Part shown: piece by piece, positions 40,945 through 54,712 of the stretch
Position numbering within the stretch: the first letter of the stretch is position 1
How the letters are laid out: each line of letters starts with the position of its first letter
The notes under the pieces: model-generated
What the model was told of the DNA's origin: nothing
Database searches by the model: none
What the model saw: the letters and a program-made list of their open reading frames with translations, nothing else
Translations under genes and position numbers: made by a program
Source of the DNA: Ascoidea asiatica JCM 7603
Taxonomy: Eukaryota > Fungi > Ascomycota
Assembly: GCA_001600695.1 (NCBI GenBank)
Contig: BCKQ01000014.1
Coordinates: 108,611-172,610, forward strand
Reading direction: 5' to 3'
Length of the DNA: 64,000 bases

Positions 40945-42213
40945 ATGTCTAATAATGATGAAAATAATAAAAAAAAAAATTTTAAAGTAAATTTTAAAGA
41001 AAATTTAAAAGAAAATTTTAAAGAAATTTCAAAAGAAAATCTGAAAGATCTTCAAAAAATAAGTAAAAAAAGAAGAAGAGCTTGTGATAGATGTCATGCA
41101 ATTAAACAAGTTTGTAGTGGTAATTCAATACCTTGTGATAGATGTAAAAGAATGAATTTACCTTGTACTTTTAATAGACCAATAAAAAAATTAGGTAGAC
41201 CAAGATTATCAACAAATAATTCTTTTAATAACATTAATAATAATATAAGTAATTTAAATTGTAATTGTAATCAATTCAATAACATTAATAACAATATTAA
41301 TAATAATATTAATAATAATAATTTAATAGTTAAACCAATTTTAAATAATCAATCAAAATTAAAAAAAAAAAAAATTAAATCTCTGTTAGAAATTTCAAAT
41401 ATTTCTCCATTTCAAAAAATTCAATCTTTTACTGATAATGAACATAAATTAAATCAAAATTTTAAAAATGATTTAATTAATTTAAATAATTTAAATAATA
41501 TCTCAGATTTATCAAATATTACAAAACTTGAAGATATTCCTGATATTCAAAATATTCCTGATATTCAAAATATTCCTGATATTCAAGACATTCAAAATAT
41601 TCAAAATATTCAAGATATTCAAGATATTCAAGAAATACAGGATATTAATCAAATTAATGATATTTCAGATATTCAAAATATTCAAAATATTCCATATCCT
41701 CCATTACCAACTTTATCAAATTATGAATATTTACCAATAAATCATACTGATTCTGTATCTTCTAAATCTTCTTTTTCAAATACTTCTTCTTCAATTGATT
41801 TATTAAATTCTTTTATTGATCCTTTTCAACCTCAATCTTTTACTTTACAATCTATTTTAAATCAAAATCAAAATCAAAATAATTCTTCATTATCTCCTTT
41901 ATCTTCTTCATCTATTTCAAATAATTCTAATAATTCAAATAATTCAAATATTTCAAATAACTCTAATAATTCTAATAATTCAAGTATTACAAGTTCTTTA
42001 CCATTATCTTCTAATAATGATACTTTAATAGATTCTTCAATATTATCTTCTTCACTCTTTATTTCAAATGATGATACTAATATCAACATCGATAACAATA
42101 ATAATGCCAATACTAATAGTAATATTAACTTCAGTTTCAATAATATGAATATAAGTAGCTCTAATTCAAATTATGATAATTTAAATCAAAATGATAATAT
42201 TAATAGTATGTTC

Positions 42214-42299
<86 letters not shown>

Positions 42300-43644
42300 A
42301 ATCATAATTGATAATATTAATAACAATAATTTAAATCCAAATCAAATTCAATCAAAAAAACAAATACAAAGACAAAATACCTTTAATCTAATAAATGATA
42401 TAACTTATAATACTAATTTAAGTTTTGATAATAATTTAATTATTAAAAACAATTTCACTCACAAAGAAAGATTTTTTTTAAATTATTTTATATCTGATGT
42501 TTCTTCTTCAATATTTTCTGATTCTTCTACAACAAATTTTTTCATGAATACTGTAATTCCATTAGCTGTAAATGATAATAAAATAAAATATCCTATTTTA
42601 GCTATTGCATCTTCATATTTAGCTAGTATTGATCCTCATAAATTTCATAGAGATTCTGTTTTATTCAAATCTTATTCTCAAGCTGCTTTAGTTAATCCAA
42701 CTTCAAAAACTGATTTTTATTTTTCAAATGAAGTTTTATTATCAATACTTTTATTAATTTTAATGGAAATTTTAAATGGTTCCTCATTATATTGGTCTGC
42801 ACTCTTGGAAAAAACCTTTTTGATAATTCAAGCAAGAGGTGGTATTAAAAAGTTATTAGGTTCTAACTCAAAGGATTATTCACCTCTATTAATACAACTT
42901 TTTTGTTATATGGATTTAATATCTTCATTAAGTACTTGTCATTCACCATATGTTGAAAAAACAAGTTCTAGTGATGCTTCAAAAACAACTTATAAGATTC
43001 CTTTTGATCCTCTGATATTTCAAAATCATTCTGAAATTCAAAATATTTTGAACTCAAAATTTGGTTTTAAGTTTGGTATAGCAGGAGAAATATTTCAATT
43101 ATTAGGAAATATTTCAACTCTTGCTTCATTGAGGAAATATCGTCATTTATCTGTTGAAAATGAACAGAATTTTTTGAAATTGGCTCAAGTTATTGAAACT
43201 AGATTAAATAATTGGACTTTACCAAGTTCAATGAATTTCTTAAACTATGATGATGTTTATAAATCTGAATATGCTGTTTCTCTTCAATGGGCTGCTTTCA
43301 TTAGATTACATCAAGTTGTCAGTGGTTATAATAGAAATGACGCAAAAATTAAAACATGCTTGCTGACAATATTAAGAGCAGTAAGTTCTATTCCAGAGGG
43401 TTCAGATCTTGAAACTGGTTTATTATTTCCATTAATAATGGCAGGCTCTGTAGCGATTAATCAAAATGATAGAGATTTCATTATTACAAGACTACGGAAT
43501 ATTAAAAAAAAATTGAAGTTTCCTTATGTGAAACAATTTGAAGAATTATTATTAAATGTATGGAGTAAAGATTATAATGAGGCTAATGATGTTAATTGGG
43601 CTTCAATAAGGTATTATGAATTTCCAGGTCTAGTAATGTTTTAA
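40945..43644 (+). CDS. Zn(II)2Cys6 transcription factor with a fungal-specific C-terminal TF domain
   Basis: RRRACDRCHAIKQVCSGNSIPCDRCKRMNLPC followed by KKLGRPR, and C-terminal LLFPLIMAG...DRDFI. Confidence 0.9.
41533..41695 (+). repeat. 9-bp coding minisatellite encoding (D/N)I(P/Q) tripeptides
   Basis: GATATTCCT, GATATTCAA and AATATTCAA units. Confidence 0.75.
42214..42297 (+). repeat. (AAT)n microsatellite encoding poly-Asn
   Basis: About 28 uninterrupted AAT units. Similar tracts occur in SAM50, the KTR gene, ADA1 and WOR3. Confidence 0.9.
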
Positions 43645-44369: not shown

Positions 44370-47300
44370 TTATGCAGCAAGCTGAGCAGCTTTGATATGA
44401 TTCATAAAAGTAGTGAAAGTTCTTTCGACCTCTGGAATTGATTTGGTAAAAGTTAACTCATTGAATCCATAGTCATTATTTTTTAACAATTCACTGAAAA
44501 CAACAACAAGACCCCATGGTTGAGGTTTGTAAGTAACCATTCTTTCTAATAAGACTCTTAAAATCAATTGTTGAATATCCTGCTTTTTACTTCCCCATGA
44601 ATTACTCTTAAAAAAATGTAAAATTAAATGAGTAAACCACAAAGTTTGGGCATTTGGATATCTTAAGTTATTAACAATAGCAGAGATAAGATGATATTGA
44701 ACTTCGGAAGAATTACTTTCACTAATCATATTAGATAACAAAGTAACATGAGATGATTTTGAGTTGTAAAATGGCTCAATATTAAGACGATCTTCAATTT
44801 CATTAATACCAACATATAGAACAATAGCATTAATCAATTTAACATCAACATTAGTTTGAGTGAAACCAATACCTGAATCTTTTTTTGTTGTAGATATTTT
44901 GATACTGCTTAAAATATTTTTTAGTAAAGGACTGAATGGAACTCTTAAATAATTGTCAATAGGTTTTTTCAAGCTTATTTTTAACAAATCATTACCTGGA
45001 TTTATAGCAATTAATGGAATTTCCTTTATTCCATCAATTTTTTCTATACCTTTCAAGGTTACTCCAAATGGATCAGGAACAGACTTTGTTTCACTAGAAG
45101 GCATAGCTGATAACACAATATTTCTTAACTGTAAGAAGCTTGGTGGAATGGAATAACAAAGAGGATAGTGATATTCAACTAAAAACTCTGGATAATCATG
45201 AAGTAAAACGATAAATATTTGAACAAGTCCTCTATAACTTGTTACAATATCCTCAGGAATATCCTTTCCTTTAATATGAGTAGATTGAAATCTCAAAAGA
45301 GACATAAACAAAGTAATGAGCTTTTTCCAGCTTTTTTTATCTGGAAATTCAAGCATAACAGGCAAGAATAATCGATGAGAGATTAAAGAAATCCAAGCAA
45401 ACATAAAAGCAGGAAACATTAGTGGTTGAAATGAATTGAAGACATCGGCCAAATATAAATATATAGAAAAATCTAAAGCAATAAAATCTTTCCTTTCTTT
45501 TTCTTCGACAATATCTTCAAAAGTTACTCTAATGTCACTCCATTCACTCAAAATAGCAGAAAAGAGCCTGAAATATGGTCTTTCATTGAATGTAGTTGGA
45601 TTGTTTTCATGATCGTAAGCAAATTCAAGAGAAATAATTGTCACAACTTGTTTGAAAAATTGCATTCTTCTGTCATTTTTTGAATCTTGCAAAATTACTG
45701 TTTTAATTATCAACTTTGCTAATGAATCTGTAACTGTAAATACATCATTAGTAACCCTATCTTTATTATTGATTTCAGTATCTCTCAAGAATGAAGATAC
45801 AGAATATTCAATAGCTGATCTGAAAAATGAGGTTAAATAGTCAGCTTTGCTGAAAACATTTTTTTCAAATAATTGATAGATGAAAGCATGTAAAAGATCA
45901 TCTTTCACATTAGGGTGCTGAGAGAGTCTAACCCACTCTGCAAATACATATCTCATTTGTTCTTTTAAAGTAATTTTAGAATCAGAAGATAATACGGGAC
46001 CAGTAGCTGATTTCAAATCATTCATCAACAATACAGCTGCTTGATTTTTAACATCCGAATTCTCCAAGACCTTTCGAATGGCATCAATACTTGAAGCAAA
46101 ATCTGAACGTAAAGATACTGGATTTGTTGAAAGTACAATATTCTCTACTAAGCTACTTGCAAAAGTGATCCCCTCAGCATCATTAGATTCAACCAAAGTA
46201 GTTAAAGAAGAATCAAGTTCTGCTGGAGAAATAATTCCAATCTTTAATAAACTTGTCATGACCTTTGGATTAAGTTTGCGTATATCATCGTTATGAAGAA
46301 GCCACCAATTTATATCTTTGGCAGTTGTGGGTGATAATTCACAAAGTTGAGAAAGAATAAAAAATAGAACCTCACAGCAAAAAACACTTTCAAATTTAGA
46401 AAAAATGCATTTAATGATATATTCAGCAATTTTTGTATGGATTTGCTCACTGTTGATTCTTATAGTTGCACACATTGCTAGAATTTCATTTGCCTTTAAC
46501 TTCATTATGTGATCTGAAGGTAATTCCAAAAATTTAGTTTGTGACTTCATATCTTTCAAACTGTTTACTAAAACATCAATGGTTTTACATAATGAAGAAA
46601 CCACATTTGCAGCAGAATTTGCTTCTGTTTGAGGAGCTAATTCTTGTGCTTGGGGTACCGGAGTACTTGTTACATTTTGAGGATTGTTATTAGGGACGTA
46701 CGCATCAAAAATTGGAACACCATTTACAATCTTCTTTATCACTTGTGGAGAATTTTGAATAGGGACATTAGATTTTAGCATTTGTGGAGTCATTGACATC
46801 TGAGTTTGCTGACGTTGGGCTGAATGAACCAAACGGCCTTTACCGAAATTTTGATATACAGAAAGCTGCTGCTCTGTAAGGCCTCCAATCTTTAATCCTA
46901 GTGGTGAAGGTAAGTCAAGGGCATATTGAGAAGCATTCTGAGAGAAAAAAGGTTGATTTTGCATTTCGGCTTTGTACTGGCGACGTAATAATACTTGAGA
47001 GACTAATCTGTGTTCAACTTCATGAGAGGCCTTAAATACAGCAGCATTTTGAACAATCTCCAAAATTCCATCTATATTATCGCCGACAGCAATATTTAAT
47101 TGAGATTCATGCTCGGAATAAGAATTTCCTAACAAATTCATTGCAAGAGCATTCATTTTTTCAATAATAGCATCTCTACATGTAGTATGAGTGAATTCGT
47201 AAGTAACAGATCTTACATGGTTTCTAGCAGCAACAATTAACTTATTATCATCAGGTTCTAAGGCAAAATCCTTTTCTACTAAAGTTAAAGCAGTTGTAAC

Positions 47301-50300
47301 ACAAATACCCACAGTCTTGCCAATAATTGTGGTCAATATATCAATAATAGTTTGTTTTATAACTACCAGGAAAGCGTTTCTAAATTCAGGAAGTAAAACA
47401 AAAGCAGATTGACCACGTAAGGAATTCAAAAGAGAATCTAAACTTGGTGTGATATACTGAAACATAATTGCAACGCTATCGCTTTCTACCGGTTGTTGAG
47501 GAATATTTGGAAGAGCTGGTCTTTGAACATTCGAAGCTTCCTGTAGAACTTGTTGCCCTGGCAATGTTTGTTGCTGAGCAAGAAATTGCTGTGATGGTGG
47601 CTGAATTACAGGCTGACCTGATGCTATTTGTTGATTAAACATTATTTGAGCTTGTTGAACTGCGAGTGGTTCTTGGGGAATATTTAAAGACTTTTCATCA
47701 ACCGATTCTAAACTTCTATCTATTACTAATCTTGCCATATCTCTAGCTACATTCTGAAGGTTCATTTTGTGCCTTAATTTATCTTGGATATCATTAGTTA
47801 AAATACTAGAAGGAACGATATCTTTGAGTTTGATTTTAAAGTCATTACAAAGAACTTCAATTTCAAACTTTAAGTTCAATTTAAGATCAGCACACTCATA
47901 TAACTCTGCTAAAAGTTTTAAAATTCCTAATGTCCAAGGATTTGGAGGGTTAAAAATAGAAGGCTCTTGAGCTTGGTTTAAAACTTTGCAAATAAAAGGG
48001 ATAACAAAAACCAATTTCTTTTGAAAATAGGCTTCAATAAGTAAATCTTTGAATTCAATATTTTTATATAAAATAGGTAGATCTCTTGCAAGAGTTAAAC
48101 GTCCAAGCCAAGATCCAAGATTTTTTAAATGAGCTTTTTCTGATGGGGTTTCATTATAATCATTCAAGAGAGAAATGATTTGTAAATAAGTAACAATCAA
48201 AATATGTTGTTCAAATAATTCAGATTTTAGACCTTCAACTAAAGCACAATATAACGATTGATAATTAGGTTCGACTTTTGCTCTTGATTTAACCATATAA
48301 TCTGAAAACCATTTATAATACTTTTCTGTAAGTAACTTTTTAATATCTGGAATTTTTGAAGAAAGATTAGATAAAGTGATATTATTTACAATGAACAATA
48401 ATTTATCTGAGACTTCCTCATCTGGGACTTCTTGAACAGTATCACTGTCAATTTCTGTATCAATATTAACCGACTTGAAAGCTCTAACTTCTACAACTTC
48501 TTCAGTAGATGTTTTAGCATTAGTTGAAACAACAGCTGAAGATGATGAATCATTACCACCATGAATAGCCTCATAAAGAATTTTATAAATCATAGGTGTT
48601 CCTGAAATACTTGAAGATTGTAATAAAAGTGTACAATATTTAGGCCATTCAGAAAGTCTATTTTTACAAGCAACTAAAGCTTGCATAGTAAACTTAAACA
48701 TATTTGAATCTGGTTGTTCTCTTGAAGCCTCTAATAAATTATTTAAACAAATAGATAGAGTAAAACCTTTAATAATTTCAAATTGAATTAAAGATCCAAA
48801 TAAAAGAGAAGTTAATTGTAAAGGTTCTACAGGATATTGATAAAAAAATTTATATTCATCTAATAATGAATGAATAATACAAGCAAATAAATCTTGTTCT
48901 TCAGGTAAATCTGATTCTTTATATTTTTCAAGAATTAATACTAAATCTTTAACAGTATCACTTTTTCCATATAATTGACTAAAATAATTTTTCATTTTTT
49001 GTTCAGTTTCATCAGTAAATGATGGAGTTGGAGAATCAATTGCTGATTTTAATATAGCTTCATCATGACCATAACCATAATTAATAAGTCTTGGATAAGT
49101 TTCAATACATTGTTTTTGAATAATTTTAAGTTTTGTAGCTAATTCCGTAGAACCAACAGCATTTGAAAGTTGATCTAATAAACTTAAATGTAAATCAACA
49201 ATTTGTAAAGGTAAAGTTGTACGATATGGAATATTATCTATAGCATAATGATTTTGAATTAATTCATATTCTGTTTTAGCTTCTTTATCTAAAAAATTAT
49301 AAATTTTAGAAAAAATAATTAATTTAAAATTAGTTGGATTTAAATTATTAAAGGCAGAAGGAATTGGAATTGAAGATAATTGATTCATAATATTATTATT
49401 AAAAAAATCTTTAATAACATCAATTTTTCCACCTTGTCTAACATATTCAGCAGAAAAAATTAAAAAATTTTCAAAAGAGCCTTGCCACAGAGATTTAAAA
49501 ATAACTTCATCAAGTTTTAAATCTCTAACTAATCTTGTAATTGAAATAAAAATTGCATTATTTGATCTTGTTTCAATTAATCTTATAAGTAAATTTATAA
49601 TATGATCAACAGAAGATTTTCCTAAAGAAGAATATTTTTTTAAAATTAAAGTTAAAAATGCAGAAGAATTAACTTCAAGTAATTTATCAATAATACTATC
49701 AAGAAAATCAATAATAAAATCATTTCTTTCTTCAGGTTTTAAATCTAAAGCAGCTATAGCTAAATATTCAGGAGCTTCAAGAAAATCATTTCTTAAAATA
49801 GAAGTAATTTGTGATGAATTTGTATTTGCAGGATTTTTATAAACATTTAAAAAAAATTTAGTTAAATTTAAATAATATAATTTTGAACTTTTTTCATTAT
49901 TAAAAGTAATAATATTAGGAGGTAATAAATTAATTACATCATTTTTAATATTATCATTCATTGATTGAAAAATATTTTTTAAATTTGAACATTTAAGAAA
50001 ATTAAAAACACCATCATTTGGATATAAATAATGAAAATGATTAAATAATAATAATTTTAAAGATGGATTAATATTATTTAAATTTGATAATTTTTCAAGA
50101 AATAAATCAATAATTTCATCAGAAATTAAAGATGATAAAAATTGAGAAACAGAAGTATAAGTTGCTTGTAAAATTGTATAATTAATATCTTTTAAATAAT
50201 TTAATAAAATTAAATTTAAAATTATATTCCAATCTGGTTTTAAAATTTCATTTGAATTTAATTTCAATAATAAAATTTTTAATTGATTACCAGAATTTAA

Positions 50301-51584
50301 AGAATCAGATAATTTTTGTGGAGTTAAACTTGTTAAACCATCATTACTTAAAGGAGCTAATCTTTGAGATTTTGGTACTAAAACTTCAGATAAAATTATT
50401 GCAATACTTTCATTAAAAGAAATTGGATCATTTAATTGTTGTTGAACAATTAATAAATTACCTAAAATTTTATTTGGTAATAATAAATCATGTGGAATTT
50501 GTAAAATTTTTTCTTTAAAAGAATTTATTGTTGAAAATTTTTTTTTTAAATAATCATTTATAATTAATTTTAAATTTTTTATATAAATAATTAAATTTAA
50601 AGATTGAAAACGAGATTCAATATAAAAAGAAATATATAATTTTTCATTTAAAGGTAAAGAATTTGATTGAATTAAAATTTGAAAAAAATTTATTAAAGTT
50701 TGAGGATTATTTAAATTATGATTAATAAAATTTGGATTTTTTAAAATTTCAAATAATGAATGTAAATTATTAATTAAAATATGAGCAGATTGTTGAATTA
50801 AATTTCTATCATTTGTTGATTGAATTGAATTTTTATCAAAATTAATTGATAAACTTAAAACAGTTTTTTGATAAGGATCTTGATAAAAATGATTTAAGAA
50901 TAAATCCCATGAATGAAATTTTAAAAAATCAGGTTCAATTAATATTGTATTTGTAAATTTTGATAAAGTTGATAAATTTGAAGTAATTAAATTTAATTCT
51001 TGATAAATTAATTTTTCAGTTGAAGTTTTGAAGCTAATATTTTGATTAATTTGATTATTATTATTATTATTGTTAATATTATTTGGATGATTTGAATTTA
51101 CAATATATGAAGTTGAATTATTAATTAATCTACGTAAGAATTTAGCATAAATTTCCGGAGGATTATTATCACATAAATGATGAATTTGTCTTGTAGTTGA
51201 ATCCCAACGTTCATCATTAATTGAAGAAGCTAATAAAGATAATTGAGCGGTTATAGTAGTATCTAGACCTAAACTGAAGTTTGAATTATTTGAGTTAGAT
51301 AAAGATTGATTATTTGATTGTAAATTAATTGGATTAGATTTAATTGAAGAACTATTTGGATTATTTGGGTTAATGATATTATTATTATTATTATTATTAT
51401 TATTGTTGTTGTTATTATTTAGTTGACTGTTATTATTATTGTTAATGTTATTGTTATTATTATTATTATTATTAGAGATTGAAGATTGATTTAAACCATT
51501 GATTATATTATTATTATTAGATAAAATCGGATTTTGTACCGATTTATTACCTCCTAAAGAAGGAATTAAATTTGATTGAGACAG
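44370..51584 (-). CDS. CDC39: CCR4-NOT scaffold Not1, ~2404 aa, proposed CTG start at 51584
   Basis: YPRLINYGYGHDEAI, LKNLGSWLG, FNERPYFRLF, LQLRNIVLSA, NNLRYPNAQT and PQPWGL motifs. I checked by hand that the frame is stop-free from 51608 to the supplied ORF start at 50267. Confidence 0.9.
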   Translation of the reverse strand: MSQSNLIPSLGGNKSVQNPILSNNNNIINGLNQSSISNNNNNNNNNINNNNNSQLNNNNNNNNNNNNNNIINPNNPNSSSIKSNPINLQSNNQSLSNSNNSNFSLGLDTTITAQLSLLASSINDERWDSTTRQIHHLCDNNPPEIYAKFLRRLINNSTSYIVNSNHPNNINNNNNNNQINQNISFKTSTEKLIYQELNLITSNLSTLSKFTNTILIEPDFLKFHSWDLFLNHFYQDPYQKTVLSLSINFDKNSIQSTNDRNLIQQSAHILINNLHSLFEILKNPNFINHNLNNPQTLINFFQILIQSNSLPLNEKLYISFYIESRFQSLNLIIYIKNLKLIINDYLKKKFSTINSFKEKILQIPHDLLLPNKILGNLLIVQQQLNDPISFNESIAIILSEVLVPKSQRLAPLSNDGLTSLTPQKLSDSLNSGNQLKILLLKLNSNEILKPDWNIILNLILLNYLKDINYTILQATYTSVSQFLSSLISDEIIDLFLEKLSNLNNINPSLKLLLFNHFHYLYPNDGVFNFLKCSNLKNIFQSMNDNIKNDVINLLPPNIITFNNEKSSKLYYLNLTKFFLNVYKNPANTNSSQITSILRNDFLEAPEYLAIAALDLKPEERNDFIIDFLDSIIDKLLEVNSSAFLTLILKKYSSLGKSSVDHIINLLIRLIETRSNNAIFISITRLVRDLKLDEVIFKSLWQGSFENFLIFSAEYVRQGGKIDVIKDFFNNNIMNQLSSIPIPSAFNNLNPTNFKLIIFSKIYNFLDKEAKTEYELIQNHYAIDNIPYRTTLPLQIVDLHLSLLDQLSNAVGSTELATKLKIIQKQCIETYPRLINYGYGHDEAILKSAIDSPTPSFTDETEQKMKNYFSQLYGKSDTVKDLVLILEKYKESDLPEEQDLFACIIHSLLDEYKFFYQYPVEPLQLTSLLFGSLIQFEIIKGFTLSICLNNLLEASREQPDSNMFKFTMQALVACKNRLSEWPKYCTLLLQSSSISGTPMIYKILYEAIHGGNDSSSSAVVSTNAKTSTEEVVEVRAFKSVNIDTEIDSDTVQEVPDEEVSDKLLFIVNNITLSNLSSKIPDIKKLLTEKYYKWFSDYMVKSRAKVEPNYQSLYCALVEGLKSELFEQHILIVTYLQIISLLNDYNETPSEKAHLKNLGSWLGRLTLARDLPILYKNIEFKDLLIEAYFQKKLVFVIPFICKVLNQAQEPSIFNPPNPWTLGILKLLAELYECADLKLNLKFEIEVLCNDFKIKLKDIVPSSILTNDIQDKLRHKMNLQNVARDMARLVIDRSLESVDEKSLNIPQEPLAVQQAQIMFNQQIASGQPVIQPPSQQFLAQQQTLPGQQVLQEASNVQRPALPNIPQQPVESDSVAIMFQYITPSLDSLLNSLRGQSAFVLLPEFRNAFLVVIKQTIIDILTTIIGKTVGICVTTALTLVEKDFALEPDDNKLIVAARNHVRSVTYEFTHTTCRDAIIEKMNALAMNLLGNSYSEHESQLNIAVGDNIDGILEIVQNAAVFKASHEVEHRLVSQVLLRRQYKAEMQNQPFFSQNASQYALDLPSPLGLKIGGLTEQQLSVYQNFGKGRLVHSAQRQQTQMSMTPQMLKSNVPIQNSPQVIKKIVNGVPIFDAYVPNNNPQNVTSTPVPQAQELAPQTEANSAANVVSSLCKTIDVLVNSLKDMKSQTKFLELPSDHIMKLKANEILAMCATIRINSEQIHTKIAEYIIKCIFSKFESVFCCEVLFFILSQLCELSPTTAKDINWWLLHNDDIRKLNPKVMTSLLKIGIISPAELDSSLTTLVESNDAEGITFASSLVENIVLSTNPVSLRSDFASSIDAIRKVLENSDVKNQAAVLLMNDLKSATGPVLSSDSKITLKEQMRYVFAEWVRLSQHPNVKDDLLHAFIYQLFEKNVFSKADYLTSFFRSAIEYSVSSFLRDTEINNKDRVTNDVFTVTDSLAKLIIKTVILQDSKNDRRMQFFKQVVTIISLEFAYDHENNPTTFNERPYFRLFSAILSEWSDIRVTFEDIVEEKERKDFIALDFSIYLYLADVFNSFQPLMFPAFMFAWISLISHRLFLPVMLEFPDKKSWKKLITLFMSLLRFQSTHIKGKDIPEDIVTSYRGLVQIFIVLLHDYPEFLVEYHYPLCYSIPPSFLQLRNIVLSAMPSSETKSVPDPFGVTLKGIEKIDGIKEIPLIAINPGNDLLKISLKKPIDNYLRVPFSPLLKNILSSIKISTTKKDSGIGFTQTNVDVKLINAIVLYVGINEIEDRLNIEPFYNSKSSHVTLLSNMISESNSSEVQYHLISAIVNNLRYPNAQTLWFTHLILHFFKSNSWGSKKQDIQQLILRVLLERMVTYKPQPWGLVVVFSELLKNNDYGFNELTFTKSIPEVERTFTTFMNHIKAAQLAA

Positions 51585-52230
51585 TTTTAAAAGATATTTT
51601 TTAATAAATTATAATAAATTGAATCAATAATAATTTCCAAAAAAAAAAAAAAAATTTTTTTTAAAATTATTATTAATTTTTGTTTATTTGAATAATTATT
51701 CAAATTGTTTTTTTATATTGAAATATATAATAGAATTGAAATGTGATATATTTTTGTTGATGAACTTTATGTTATATGAGAATATATCAAAAGATAAGAT
51801 TAATATGATATATTGATGTATTAATGTATTTTAAATAAATTAATATAACTTGTTAATAGTTCTTTTTGAATACATAAATGATATTAGAGGTAATGAAAAA
51901 GGGTAATAAGAAATAAAGTGAGTAAAAATAAAGATGGATTATAAGTAATTGTGAATAAGGTAATTGTGAATAAAGTAATTGAGAATCTTGATGTATTATA
52001 CTAATGATATATGATTATTATATTATTTATTATATTATATTATATTGTAATTGATTTATTGTTGAATATATTTAATATATTTGATTTATTTAATATATTT
52101 GATGTATTTTACAATCGAAATGGAGTAATAACAATAGAAGAGTGCAAGTATTATTCCTGACAACACTCAGCGTTAATGCTAATGTTAGTATTAGTATTAG
52201 TATTGGTATTGGTATTGGTAGCAGCACAGA

Positions 52231-52290
52231 GGTCACATGCTGAGAAACTAGTAGGTCACGTGTGTGAATTATGTAATTTATTACATAATT
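52231..52290. promoter_or_regulatory. NOT1 upstream element: GTCACGTG (Cbf1-type) plus inverted pair AATTATGTAA/TTACATAATT
   Basis: GTCACATG near 52232, CACGTG at 52257-52262, and a 10-bp inverted repeat at 52267-52290. Confidence 0.4.
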
Positions 52291-52621: not shown

Positions 52622-54486
52622 TTAATCTTCTAAAACATCATTTCCATTTTTATTTGCATTTTCAATTTGAATTTGATTATCGTTATCATTCTCACTTTCA
52701 TTATCATTATCATTATCATTTTCATTTTCATTTTCATTTTCATTAATATTAACATTTTCAACAGCCTTTTGTAAATCTAATTCTAATTCTAATTCTGCAT
52801 CAATATTAATTTCATTTAATTCTGCATCAATTAATTCTTCATCATATTTACTTAATTCTTCTTCAATTTCTTTATCTTTTTTATCTTTTTCAATAATTTT
52901 ATTATATATATTCTCACTTAATTCATTAATTTCTTTTGGTTCTTCCCAATTCATAACTTTATAAAATTTATCAATACATAATAAATCTTCATTTTTATTA
53001 CCAATATTTTTATTACCAATATTATTATTATTTTTTAAAATTATTTCTTCAATATTAATATCTTCAGTTAATTGATCATTTTCATCTAAATCATTATTAA
53101 AATCTTCAAATAATTTCCAATTTGAATTTAATCTTGAATCACAAAAACATTTAAATTTTAAATAATTTTCATTTTTTAATGGACATGTATATATATTTTT
53201 TAATTTTTTTGTTGTCCAATTTAATTTTTTATTATTACCTTTTGAATTATAATAACCAATAAATTCATTTAAAAAAATTATTTCAGTTTTAAAATCTTTT
53301 AATAATAAACTTAAACCAATAGTTCTAATTAAAGAATCTGACCAATTTTCATAATAAATTCCACCTTTTAAATCAAAAAATTTAAAAAAATTTTCATAAG
53401 ATGAATTTCTTAAAAAATCTAAATTTAAAATTTCAAAATTTGTATAAAATGAACAATAATTATAATCTTTACCATTATTATCACTTAAAAAAAATTTAAT
53501 TAATTTATTATTTTTAATATTATTATTTAAATTATTTTCATTAATAAATTCATTTGTATAATTCCAAAATTTATTAATTGTATAATTTTCAATATTATTA
53601 ATTAAATTTGTACCAAATTTATAATTTTTTTTTTCAAAATTTTTAAAAATATCAAAATTTAAATCACATTGAAATTGAATATTTGGTTCAATTCTCCAAT
53701 AATATTTATAATTTTTTAAAATATTTAAATTATAAAATAAACCTGAATAAAATCTAGACATATGTCTAAAAGAATCAGTATTTGTATATTTTGCATTTAT
53801 AGGTAATTTTGAATAATTTTTTCTAATTTCAATTTTTCTATTTCTTGCTTTAATTTTTTCAATAAAATTTGGATATGACCAATAATCTTTTTTATCTAAT
53901 TGATAAAAAATTGTTTTACCAGATGTAAAACTTCCAATATTTTTTTTAAAAGTTGTAGTAAAAGCTTTATCAGTTACAAAAATCCAATCATAATTAAAAT
54001 TATGATTAAATCTATCTTCAACAGATCTTATAGTTGATAATATTGAAAATAAATCATTATTTCTAACTAAAGAAAATAAAGTTGCATTTGCTCTTTTATA
54101 ATTATTATAATTATTTAAATTAGGATTAATTGAATAAATTGGATCATAAATAACTAAATCATTATTACCAAAAGGTTTTAAAATTTTTTTAACTAAACCA
54201 AAATGAGTTGTAATAGTTTGATTATCACGATTAAAATTATATTCATTACTAAAAAATTGATAATTATTTTGATTAAAACTTTTTTTAAAATTATTTGAAT
54301 TTTCATTAAAATCAGATAATGAATTTGATATTGAATTTGATATTGAATTAGATTTCTCAAAAGTATTATCTTGATTGATATATTCCTTTTCTTCTTCTTC
54401 TACTTCATCTTCAATTTCATTATCTTTGTCAGGTTTTGTATCACTTTCTTTATTACTTTCCTTATCACTTTTTATAATATTATTAA

Positions 54487-54544
<58 letters not shown>

Positions 54545-54712
54545 GGGTATATTTATCTGAATTTTATCAGAAATTTTATTTTTTAAATTTATTGAATCAT
54601 TAGATGAAAAAGTATTTGAAAAAAAAGAAATATTTAAAAAACATATTATTATTATTATTGTTATCAGTATTATTTGTAAAGATTTAAAACTTCTTCTTTT
54701 TATTAATGCCAT
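52622..54712 (-). CDS. Golgi type II GT15 (KRE2/KTR family) mannosyltransferase-like protein, divergent
   Basis: N-terminal TM, NATLFSLVRN, SVEDRFNHNFNYDWIF, SFRHMSRFYSG, YKYYWRIEP and NFEI. Confidence 0.88.

What the first reader, a model, noticed from the sequence alone, without database searches (positions are those of the whole stretch)
49961..51611. Essential NOT1/CDC39 gene appears to start at a CUG codon: 541 Met-free codons upstream of the first in-frame ATG
Seen in sequence: the minus-strand NOT1 frame is open from a TAA at 51611-51609 down to 44370. The first in-frame ATG is at 49961, 541 codons after a CTG at 51584-51582. That CTG sits in the context TTTTAAAA-CTG-TCT, an optimal yeast start context (A at -3, Ser TCT at +4) like the ATG starts elsewhere in the window. 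The extension has coding-like codon use and encodes Not1-like N-terminal motifs (TITAQLSLLASSINDERWDSTTRQIHH...PEIYAKFLRRLI). I found no GTATGT donor and no TACTAAC close to an acceptor that could supply an ATG exon. The first AUG after the CUG (51499) is out of frame and gives ATG-GTT-TAA. Established knowledge: Not1 is an essential ~2100-2400 aa scaffold, and CUG is the most efficient near-cognate start codon. Inference: full-length Not1 (~2404 aa) depends on non-AUG initiation, which would tie CCR4-NOT dosage to start-codon stringency (eIF1/eIF5). Automated annotation would truncate this gene.
Basis: partly seen in the sequence, partly recalled or inferred. Interest (0 to 1): 0.9.

Follow-up and report, generated by a model that had tools for sequence, protein, structure and literature searches.

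The report
Yeast NOT1 starts at CUG
This yeast seems able to make the scaffold of its main mRNA-decay complex only from a CUG start codon; related budding yeasts also use weak or non-AUG starts for the long form of this protein, so many database entries lack its first 200-280 residues.

Summary
Observation confirmed. The single-copy NOT1 frame (genome very probably Ascoidea asiatica) is open from 51608; CTG 51584 has a strong context; the first in-frame ATG is codon 542. The extension is conserved Not1 sequence, and no consensus splice donor can supply an AUG.

All 11 other yeast NOT1 loci fetched share one design: a weak first start (8 near-cognate: GTG x6, TTG, ATT; 3 poor-context ATG), 645-970 nt without any ATG, then an internal ATG. 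This is the two-isoform leaky scanning proven for S. cerevisiae (PMC8970588), but mostly with a non-AUG start, which I found in no paper. Many deposited models begin at the internal Met.

This genome is the exception. The internal Met is lost and 19 out-of-frame ATGs follow the CTG, so a scanned mRNA can yield only the CUG-initiated form. Hairpins 22-61 nt after the CTG support a genuine near-cognate start.

The N-terminus is dispensable in S. cerevisiae, so dependence for viability is unproven. The scan noted this only on this same stretch.

The parts
44370..51584 (-). NOT1/CDC39 coding sequence if initiated at CUG, 2404 aa, single copy in the genome
   Evidence: (six CNOT1/Not1 Pfam families above cut-off)
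51582..51584 (-). Proposed CUG start codon; A at -3, Ser TCT next, 9th codon after the in-frame TAA
   Evidence: relatives
51609..51611 (-). In-frame TAA that closes the frame upstream
51585..51717 (-). TATA-like element (51717) and probable leader, about 6% GC, no ATG; nearest upstream ATG is 291 nt before the CTG
   Evidence: transcription start not measured
51550..51563 (-). Predicted 5-bp hairpin at +22..+35 from the C of CUG
51524..51545 (-). Predicted 7-bp hairpin at +40..+61, built with rare TCG and CCG codons (joint usage about 0.001)
51491..51499 (-). First AUG after the CUG: out of frame, AUG-GUU-UAA, T at -3
51270..51530 (-). Asn-rich linker (aa 19-105); only the NOT1 frame is free of stops (0 versus 5 and 37)
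51123..51260 (-). Conserved first helices of the Not1 N-terminal domain; window aa 105/114 align to S. cerevisiae 21/30, the start of the Caf130-binding segment 21-153
   Evidence: (E 1e-7); PMC8970588
50523..50525 (-). Asn354, the column where relatives carry the internal start Met (M-S-F-K); lost here
49746..50519 (-). CNOT1_HEAT_N domain (aa 356-613); about three quarters of it lies upstream of the first ATG
   Evidence: E 7e-27
49959..49961 (-). First in-frame ATG (codon 542), T at -3, unconserved column (S. cerevisiae 336), behind 19 out-of-frame ATGs

Best explanation
The CUG at 51584 is the real start of full-length Not1. Shown (sequence): open frame, strong context, conserved N-terminal domains upstream of any in-frame AUG, no consensus intron donor. 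Shown (comparison): budding-yeast NOT1 genes keep a weak first start, an ATG-free stretch and an internal AUG at the second domain; the weak start is GUG, UUG or AUU in most lineages sampled and a poor-context AUG in others. Inferred: scanning ribosomes initiate at the near-cognate codon with initiator Met-tRNA at low efficiency, helped by a hairpin 20-60 nt downstream, giving the long (Caf130-binding) isoform; the rest scan on to the internal AUG and make the short isoform. In this genome the internal AUG is lost and out-of-frame AUGs have accumulated, so ribosomes that skip the CUG make only 1-30 residue peptides and all Not1 from this mRNA is the CUG-initiated long form. Further inferred, untested: Not1 level then follows start-codon stringency, and skipped events may feed nonsense-mediated decay.
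For: (anatomy). (extension is conserved Not1). L003, L004, L011, L012 ATC-GTG-TCT; L010 ACC-GTG-TCA; L002 CAA-GTG-TCA; L001 AGT-TTG-TCA; L008 ACC-ATT-TCT, each within 2-25 codons of an in-frame stop. L021, L023, L024 have ATG with T, T, C at -3. Zero ATG in any frame in the gap in all 11; for the 8 near-cognate loci 6.5-11.4 expected by rate, codon-order permutation P 0.0002-0.11 versus 0.32-0.93 for the next segment, synonymous null P 0.0005-0.14. Window: 9 out-of-frame ATGs before the lost-Met column, 8-10 expected. GCCC-N3..6-GGGC at +20..+29 in 6 of 8 near-cognate loci, none elsewhere in those genes, no structure in the 3 ATG loci; window hairpins P 0.0005-0.007. (PMC8970588): leaky scanning proven in S. 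cerevisiae; a downstream hairpin raises yeast CUG initiation from about 12% to 48% in vitro.
Against: No reads, RNA, footprint or peptide evidence. No Ascoidea relative was available; the two nearest rows in the tree (L023, L024; long branches) start with a weak ATG. Loss of the internal AUG is also what a strong AUG at 51584 would cause. In S. cerevisiae an M1-to-CTG allele behaves as loss of the long form, though in a poor context. One of 15 control genes shows similarly stable structure after its AUG, and per-locus folding tests in relatives are mostly not significant. The conserved 4-bp hairpin is weak (-5.6 kcal/mol) and could be an S-P-x-G protein motif. Starts in L002 and L008 were picked by resemblance.
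Confidence: 0.78

Rival explanations
1. The genome really has (or recently had) AAAA-ATG-TCT; the C is an assembly error or a strain-specific mutation. A strong AUG ended leaky scanning, which let the internal AUG decay.
For: One base change gives a perfect AUG start. It explains loss of the internal Met and the ordinary number of out-of-frame ATGs. Runs of two studies hold 0.94-0.99 of sampled words, which cannot exclude one wrong base.
Against: No other yeast locus fetched has a strong first AUG (11 of 11 weak). Hairpins of rare codons follow the CTG as in near-cognate relatives, and are absent in the ATG-starting ones. An error would have to hit exactly this base and give the best near-cognate codon.
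Confidence: 0.09
2. CUG initiation gives the long form, but a shorter mRNA from an internal promoter (or reinitiation) supplies a truncated Not1 from ATG 49961 or 49388, so the cell does not depend on CUG alone.
For: The N-terminus is dispensable in S. cerevisiae. Codons 151-600 are 14-17% GC and could hide a promoter. A product from 49961 keeps the TTP-, CAF1-binding and Not1 domains.
Against: ATG 49961 has T at -3, is unconserved and cuts a HEAT domain. One NOT1 mRNA was seen in S. cerevisiae. No transcript evidence either way.
Confidence: 0.12
3. A 5' intron joins an upstream AUG exon to the frame, for example at CAG 51274 or TAG 51269 after the branch-like ATCTAAC.
For: A branch-like sequence and acceptors sit just before the conserved domain; 28 in-frame joins can be drawn. 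Some deposited models of relatives use such exons.
Against: Every join needs a non-consensus donor; this genome's intron in the window is canonical. The skipped stretch is an open, stop-free frame. Deposited 5' exons differ between records of one species (C. auris, P. kudriavzevii). A Debaryomyces-cluster transcript ORF (MMETSP, P0129) marked complete starts at the internal Met.
Confidence: 0.04
4. Initiation is non-AUG but at another codon (ATT 51605 or 51566, ATA 51506, ATC 51503) or spread over several.
For: These in-frame near-cognates exist and two have A at -3; aa 1-105 are unconserved.
Against: CTG is the first in strong context, is followed by TCT as in all 8 near-cognate relatives, and sits 22 nt before a hairpin as they do.
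Confidence: 0.05

Closest known systems
S. cerevisiae NOT1/CDC39 two-isoform leaky scanning (Pillet et al. 2022, PMC8970588)
   Same: Same gene; weak first start; long isoform carries the Caf130-binding N-terminal domain. The ATG-free gap and internal AUG are present in all 11 relatives fetched.
   Different: S. cerevisiae uses a poor-context AUG. Here the first start is CUG in strong context, and the internal AUG and the ATG-free gap are lost, so only the long form is predicted.
Exclusive non-AUG initiation of ISC1 in Kluyveromyces (bioRxiv 10.1101/2022.03.25.485750)
   Same: Near-cognate codon in strong context, different codons in different species (UUG/GUG), out-of-frame AUGs block the annotated AUG.
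   Different: ISC1 has footprint and transcript-end support; NOT1 here has none. NOT1 is an essential scaffold and the non-AUG start spans several yeast orders.
Dual near-cognate/AUG starts of fungal aminoacyl-tRNA synthetases, TRZ1, FOL1 (PMC7049704)
   Same: Weak AUG and near-cognate codons replace each other during evolution; leaky scanning gives two proteoforms.
   Different: Those add short mitochondrial presequences; here the extension is a 210-350 residue folded interaction domain.
Human CNOT1 long and short isoforms (review PMC12746107)
   Same: Long form carries the N-terminal module (CNOT10/CNOT11 docking), at least 235 extra residues.
   Different: Origin of the human isoforms is stated to be unknown; not tested here.

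Membership tests
Not1/CNOT1 scaffold | HEAT_N, TTP-binding, CAF1-binding, DUF3819, ARM and Not1 domains in order | tested here: met
   all six above curated cut-off
Not1/CNOT1 scaffold | Sole NOT1 gene of the genome | tested here: met
   one match
S. cerevisiae-type two-isoform NOT1 | Weak first start codon | tested here: met
   CTG in the window; weak in 11 of 11 relatives
S. cerevisiae-type two-isoform NOT1 | No ATG in any frame between first start and internal start | tested here: not met
   9 out-of-frame ATGs before codon 354, 19 before codon 542; met in all 11 relatives
S. cerevisiae-type two-isoform NOT1 | In-frame AUG at the start of the second domain | tested here: not met
   Asn354 in the M-S-F-K column
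S. cerevisiae-type two-isoform NOT1 | Two protein bands; long form binds Caf130 | not testable with these tools
   needs western blot and pull-down; CAF130 was not searched in this genome
Exclusively non-AUG-initiated gene (ISC1 type) | Near-cognate codon in strong context heading a conserved N-terminus | tested here: met
Exclusively non-AUG-initiated gene (ISC1 type) | Out-of-frame AUGs block the first in-frame AUG | tested here: met
Exclusively non-AUG-initiated gene (ISC1 type) | Near-cognate start conserved in close relatives | tested here: inconclusive
   near-cognate in 8 more distant loci; weak ATG in the two nearest rows; no Ascoidea relative returned
Exclusively non-AUG-initiated gene (ISC1 type) | Codon confirmed in reads | not tested
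Exclusively non-AUG-initiated gene (ISC1 type) | Single transcript start and ribosome footprints from the codon | not testable with these tools
   no RNA run listed

The most novel reading that the evidence does not exclude
Across most budding-yeast lineages sampled the long, Caf130-binding Not1 isoform starts at a hairpin-assisted GUG/UUG/AUU codon, so CCR4-NOT composition is set by start-codon stringency; in this species the short isoform is gone and the whole supply of an essential scaffold comes from a CUG start.
Probability: 0.55. Interest if true: 0.82.

Novelty: new variant of a known kind. Interest (0 to 1): 0.72.

Why it matters
First, it extends a mechanism shown only in S. cerevisiae to the subphylum and shows that the weak start is usually a non-AUG codon. 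The split between CCR4-NOT complexes with and without the N-terminal module could then respond to start-codon stringency or helicase activity. A 2025 review (PMC12746107) calls the origin of the two human CNOT1 isoforms unknown and suspects the feature is general. Second, it corrects annotation: 26 deposited proteins seen here start at the internal Met (Debaryomyces, Clavispora, Diutina, Cyberlindnera, Candida tropicalis, C. parapsilosis and others), and several others carry mutually inconsistent 5' exons. Third, this genome would be a rare case of an essential fungal gene with no usable AUG. Existing public proteomics (PXD009494) can test it at once.

Tried and rejected
The one run search returned DNA runs only. 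Exact look-up of the TTG-50267 product was blank and uninformative. Metagenome scan gave one distant, non-yeast locus. Single-sequence PDB search of the extension found only low-complexity noise. Searches for tRNA-CAG genes found none (incomplete, not evidence of absence), so species identity rests on contig number and codon usage. The two internal CTG codons do not settle the code. First tree run timed out; FastTree used instead. Ten paper searches found no report of a non-AUG start for NOT1; the library lacks most subscription journals. Rejected: pseudogene or frameshift (frame intact, single copy), paralogue supplying the N-terminus, canonical intron.

Full report
1. Observation. The minus-strand frame opens after TAA 51611-51609 and runs to the stop at 44372-44370. 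CTG 51584 is its ninth codon, in TTTTAAAA-CTG-TCT. The first in-frame ATG is 49961, codon 542 from the CTG. A Met-free run of this length has probability 0.0026 at the window's Met rate and 8.5e-5 at the rate of the rest of the gene. Nineteen out-of-frame ATGs lie between the two codons; the first gives AUG-GUU-UAA. A TATA-like element lies 133 nt upstream, the leader is about 6% GC, and the nearest upstream ATG is 291 nt away.

2. Organism and gene. The genome has 20.3 Mb in 71 contigs and one NOT1 match. The Ascoidea asiatica NRRL Y-17576 assembly has 71 records (PMC6041473). Window codon usage matches the published A. asiatica values (r 0.993, RMSD 0.10; A. rubescens RMSD 0.41; I inferred the column order of that table). 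The identification is therefore likely, not proven. The 2404-aa product carries six Not1/CNOT1 Pfam families. HEAT_N spans aa 356-613, mostly upstream of the first ATG. Residues 105-165 align with S. cerevisiae Not1 21-81 (BLASTP E 1e-7), the start of the Caf130-binding segment 21-153 (PMC8970588). The extension is therefore conserved coding sequence.

3. Intron. There is no GTA-N-GT, GTATG, GTAAG or GTGAGT donor between 52700 and 49950. A branch-like ATCTAAC with nearby AGs exists at 51300-51269. Enumerating every upstream-ATG, donor and acceptor combination gave 28 in-frame joins, all with non-consensus donors and introns of 420-1230 nt, while the PP1-gene intron in the window is canonical. 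The stretch that would be skipped is stop-free only in the NOT1 frame.

4. Relatives. Deposited budding-yeast Not1 proteins are often 1850-2010 aa, while prokaryote-style gene calls on the same genes are 2060-2290 aa. I fetched 11 distinct loci. Eight have no upstream in-frame ATG. Within 2-25 codons of an in-frame stop they show a near-cognate codon followed by a Ser codon: ATC-GTG-TCT in L003 ([Candida] anglica), L004 (Debaryomyces cluster), L011 (C. maltosa) and L012 (Diutina cluster); ACC-GTG-TCA in L010 (Cyberlindnera cluster); CAA-GTG-TCA in L002 ([C.] arabinofermentans); AGT-TTG-TCA in L001 (unnamed, next to Wickerhamomyces); ACC-ATT-TCT in L008 (Kuraishia). Seven have A at -3. Starts in L002 and L008 are my picks by resemblance. 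Three loci (L021 Pachysolen; L023 and L024, unnamed, nearest to the window in the tree, 99% SH-like on long branches) start with ATG but with T, T or C at -3. JGI calls that keep the first residue show V-S-S or V-S-L for further species.

5. The gap. In all 11 loci there is no ATG in any frame for 645-970 nt, up to an internal ATG. In most it falls in one column, M-S-F-K, at the start of the second domain. For the eight near-cognate loci, 6.5-11.4 out-of-frame ATGs were expected by rate. Codon-order permutation gives P 0.0002-0.11 per locus, against 0.32-0.93 for the next segment of equal length. A synonymous-codon null gives 0.0005-0.14. The loci share ancestry, so these values should not simply be multiplied. 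This is the architecture that Pillet et al. proved by mutation in S. cerevisiae: a weak AUG, no out-of-frame ATG, a second start at M163, and a minor long isoform that alone binds Caf130, Cal4 and Btt1 and controls RPL3/RPL4 mRNA. That paper and a 2025 review do not mention non-AUG starts, and my searches found no such report.

6. What is special here. The internal-Met column holds Asn354 (50525). Nine out-of-frame ATGs precede it, where 8-10 are expected by chance. The design for a short isoform has decayed. ATG 49961 has a poor context, is unconserved and cuts a domain. A scanned mRNA can thus give Not1 only from the CUG. The closest known case is ISC1 in Kluyveromyces.

7. Hairpin. Six of the eight near-cognate loci carry GCCC-N3..6-GGGC at +20 to +29, and the motif occurs nowhere else in those 6.2-6.7 kb genes. 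It is encoded as S-P-K/Q-G, S-P-K-E-G or R-P-L-E-G, using uncommon codons (joint usage 0.002-0.02). The three ATG loci have no structure there. At protein level an S-P-x-G-like motif lies in the first 50 residues of 89 of 107 full-length entries, mostly at residues 6-11 (many entries are near-duplicates). The window has two hairpins, +22..+35 and +40..+61, more stable than synonymous recodings (P 0.0005-0.007); one of 15 control genes is similar. In reconstituted yeast initiation a downstream hairpin raised CUG use from about 12% to 48%. This places the window with the near-cognate group and argues against a mis-called ATG. The conserved stem is short, per-locus folding tests are mostly not significant, and a protein motif is an alternative.

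8. Mechanism and limits. Shown: anatomy, homology, conserved weak start, ATG-free gap, and its loss here. Inferred: initiation at CUG by initiator Met-tRNA, help from the hairpin, a single long isoform. Speculative: control by eIF1/eIF5 stringency, and decay triggered by skipped starts. No RNA run was listed. In S. cerevisiae the N-terminus is dispensable and an M1-to-CTG allele loses the long form in its poor context, so dependence of viability on this CUG is not established.

9. Verdict. A real feature and a new variant of a known kind. CUG start of full-length Not1: about 0.8. The wider pattern, non-AUG starts for long Not1 across several yeast orders with systematic mis-annotation, rests on eight loci from different species and is firmer than the species-specific claim. 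Interest 0.72. The scan's own notes held only this same stretch read in another window, which is not independent support.

Noticed in passing
window 44370-51584 (-): Strong GC3 gradient inside NOT1: 0.01-0.07 in codons 151-1050, 0.16-0.27 in the 3' half. Unexplained.
   Followed up: no
window 7046-6831 (-): 216-nt intron of the PP1 (GLC7-like) gene with GTATGT donor, TACTAAC branch, an AAG acceptor and a short tandem repeat inside.
   Followed up: partly
window 52262-52179 (-): Upstream of NOT1: CACGTGA element at 52262, and GCATGT (52240) with TACTAAC (52190) and a TAG, an intron-like set that cannot rescue the frame because stops follow.
   Followed up: partly
window 40945-43644 (+) and 52622-54712 (-): Neighbours are a Zn2Cys6 transcription factor and a glycosyltransferase-15 mannosyltransferase; the NOT1-CDC50 adjacency of L001, L002, L010, L023 and L024 is absent here.
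   Followed up: no
window 49490 and 47369 (-), NOT1 aa 699 and 1406: The two internal CTG codons face aliphatic or Gln residues, not Ser, in homologues; of interest in a species reported to decode CUG as both Ser and Leu.
   Followed up: partly
P0139, P0142 (Candidozyma auris); P0382, P0384, P0385 (Pichia kudriavzevii); P0177; P0397: Deposited NOT1 models of one species carry different N-termini, or appear fused to neighbouring genes, as expected when gene finders cannot find an ATG.
   Followed up: partly
P0192 and P0369: NCBI records labelled Kocuria palustris (MCH0629631.1) and Asgard group archaeon (MCP8717299.1) cluster with Diutina and Candida tropicalis Not1; probably yeast contigs in prokaryote assemblies.
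   Followed up: no
P0033, P0034, P0036 (Sungouiella-like): Called starts lie six codons before the V-S-S motif; the codon was not checked and may be a newly gained upstream start.
   Followed up: no
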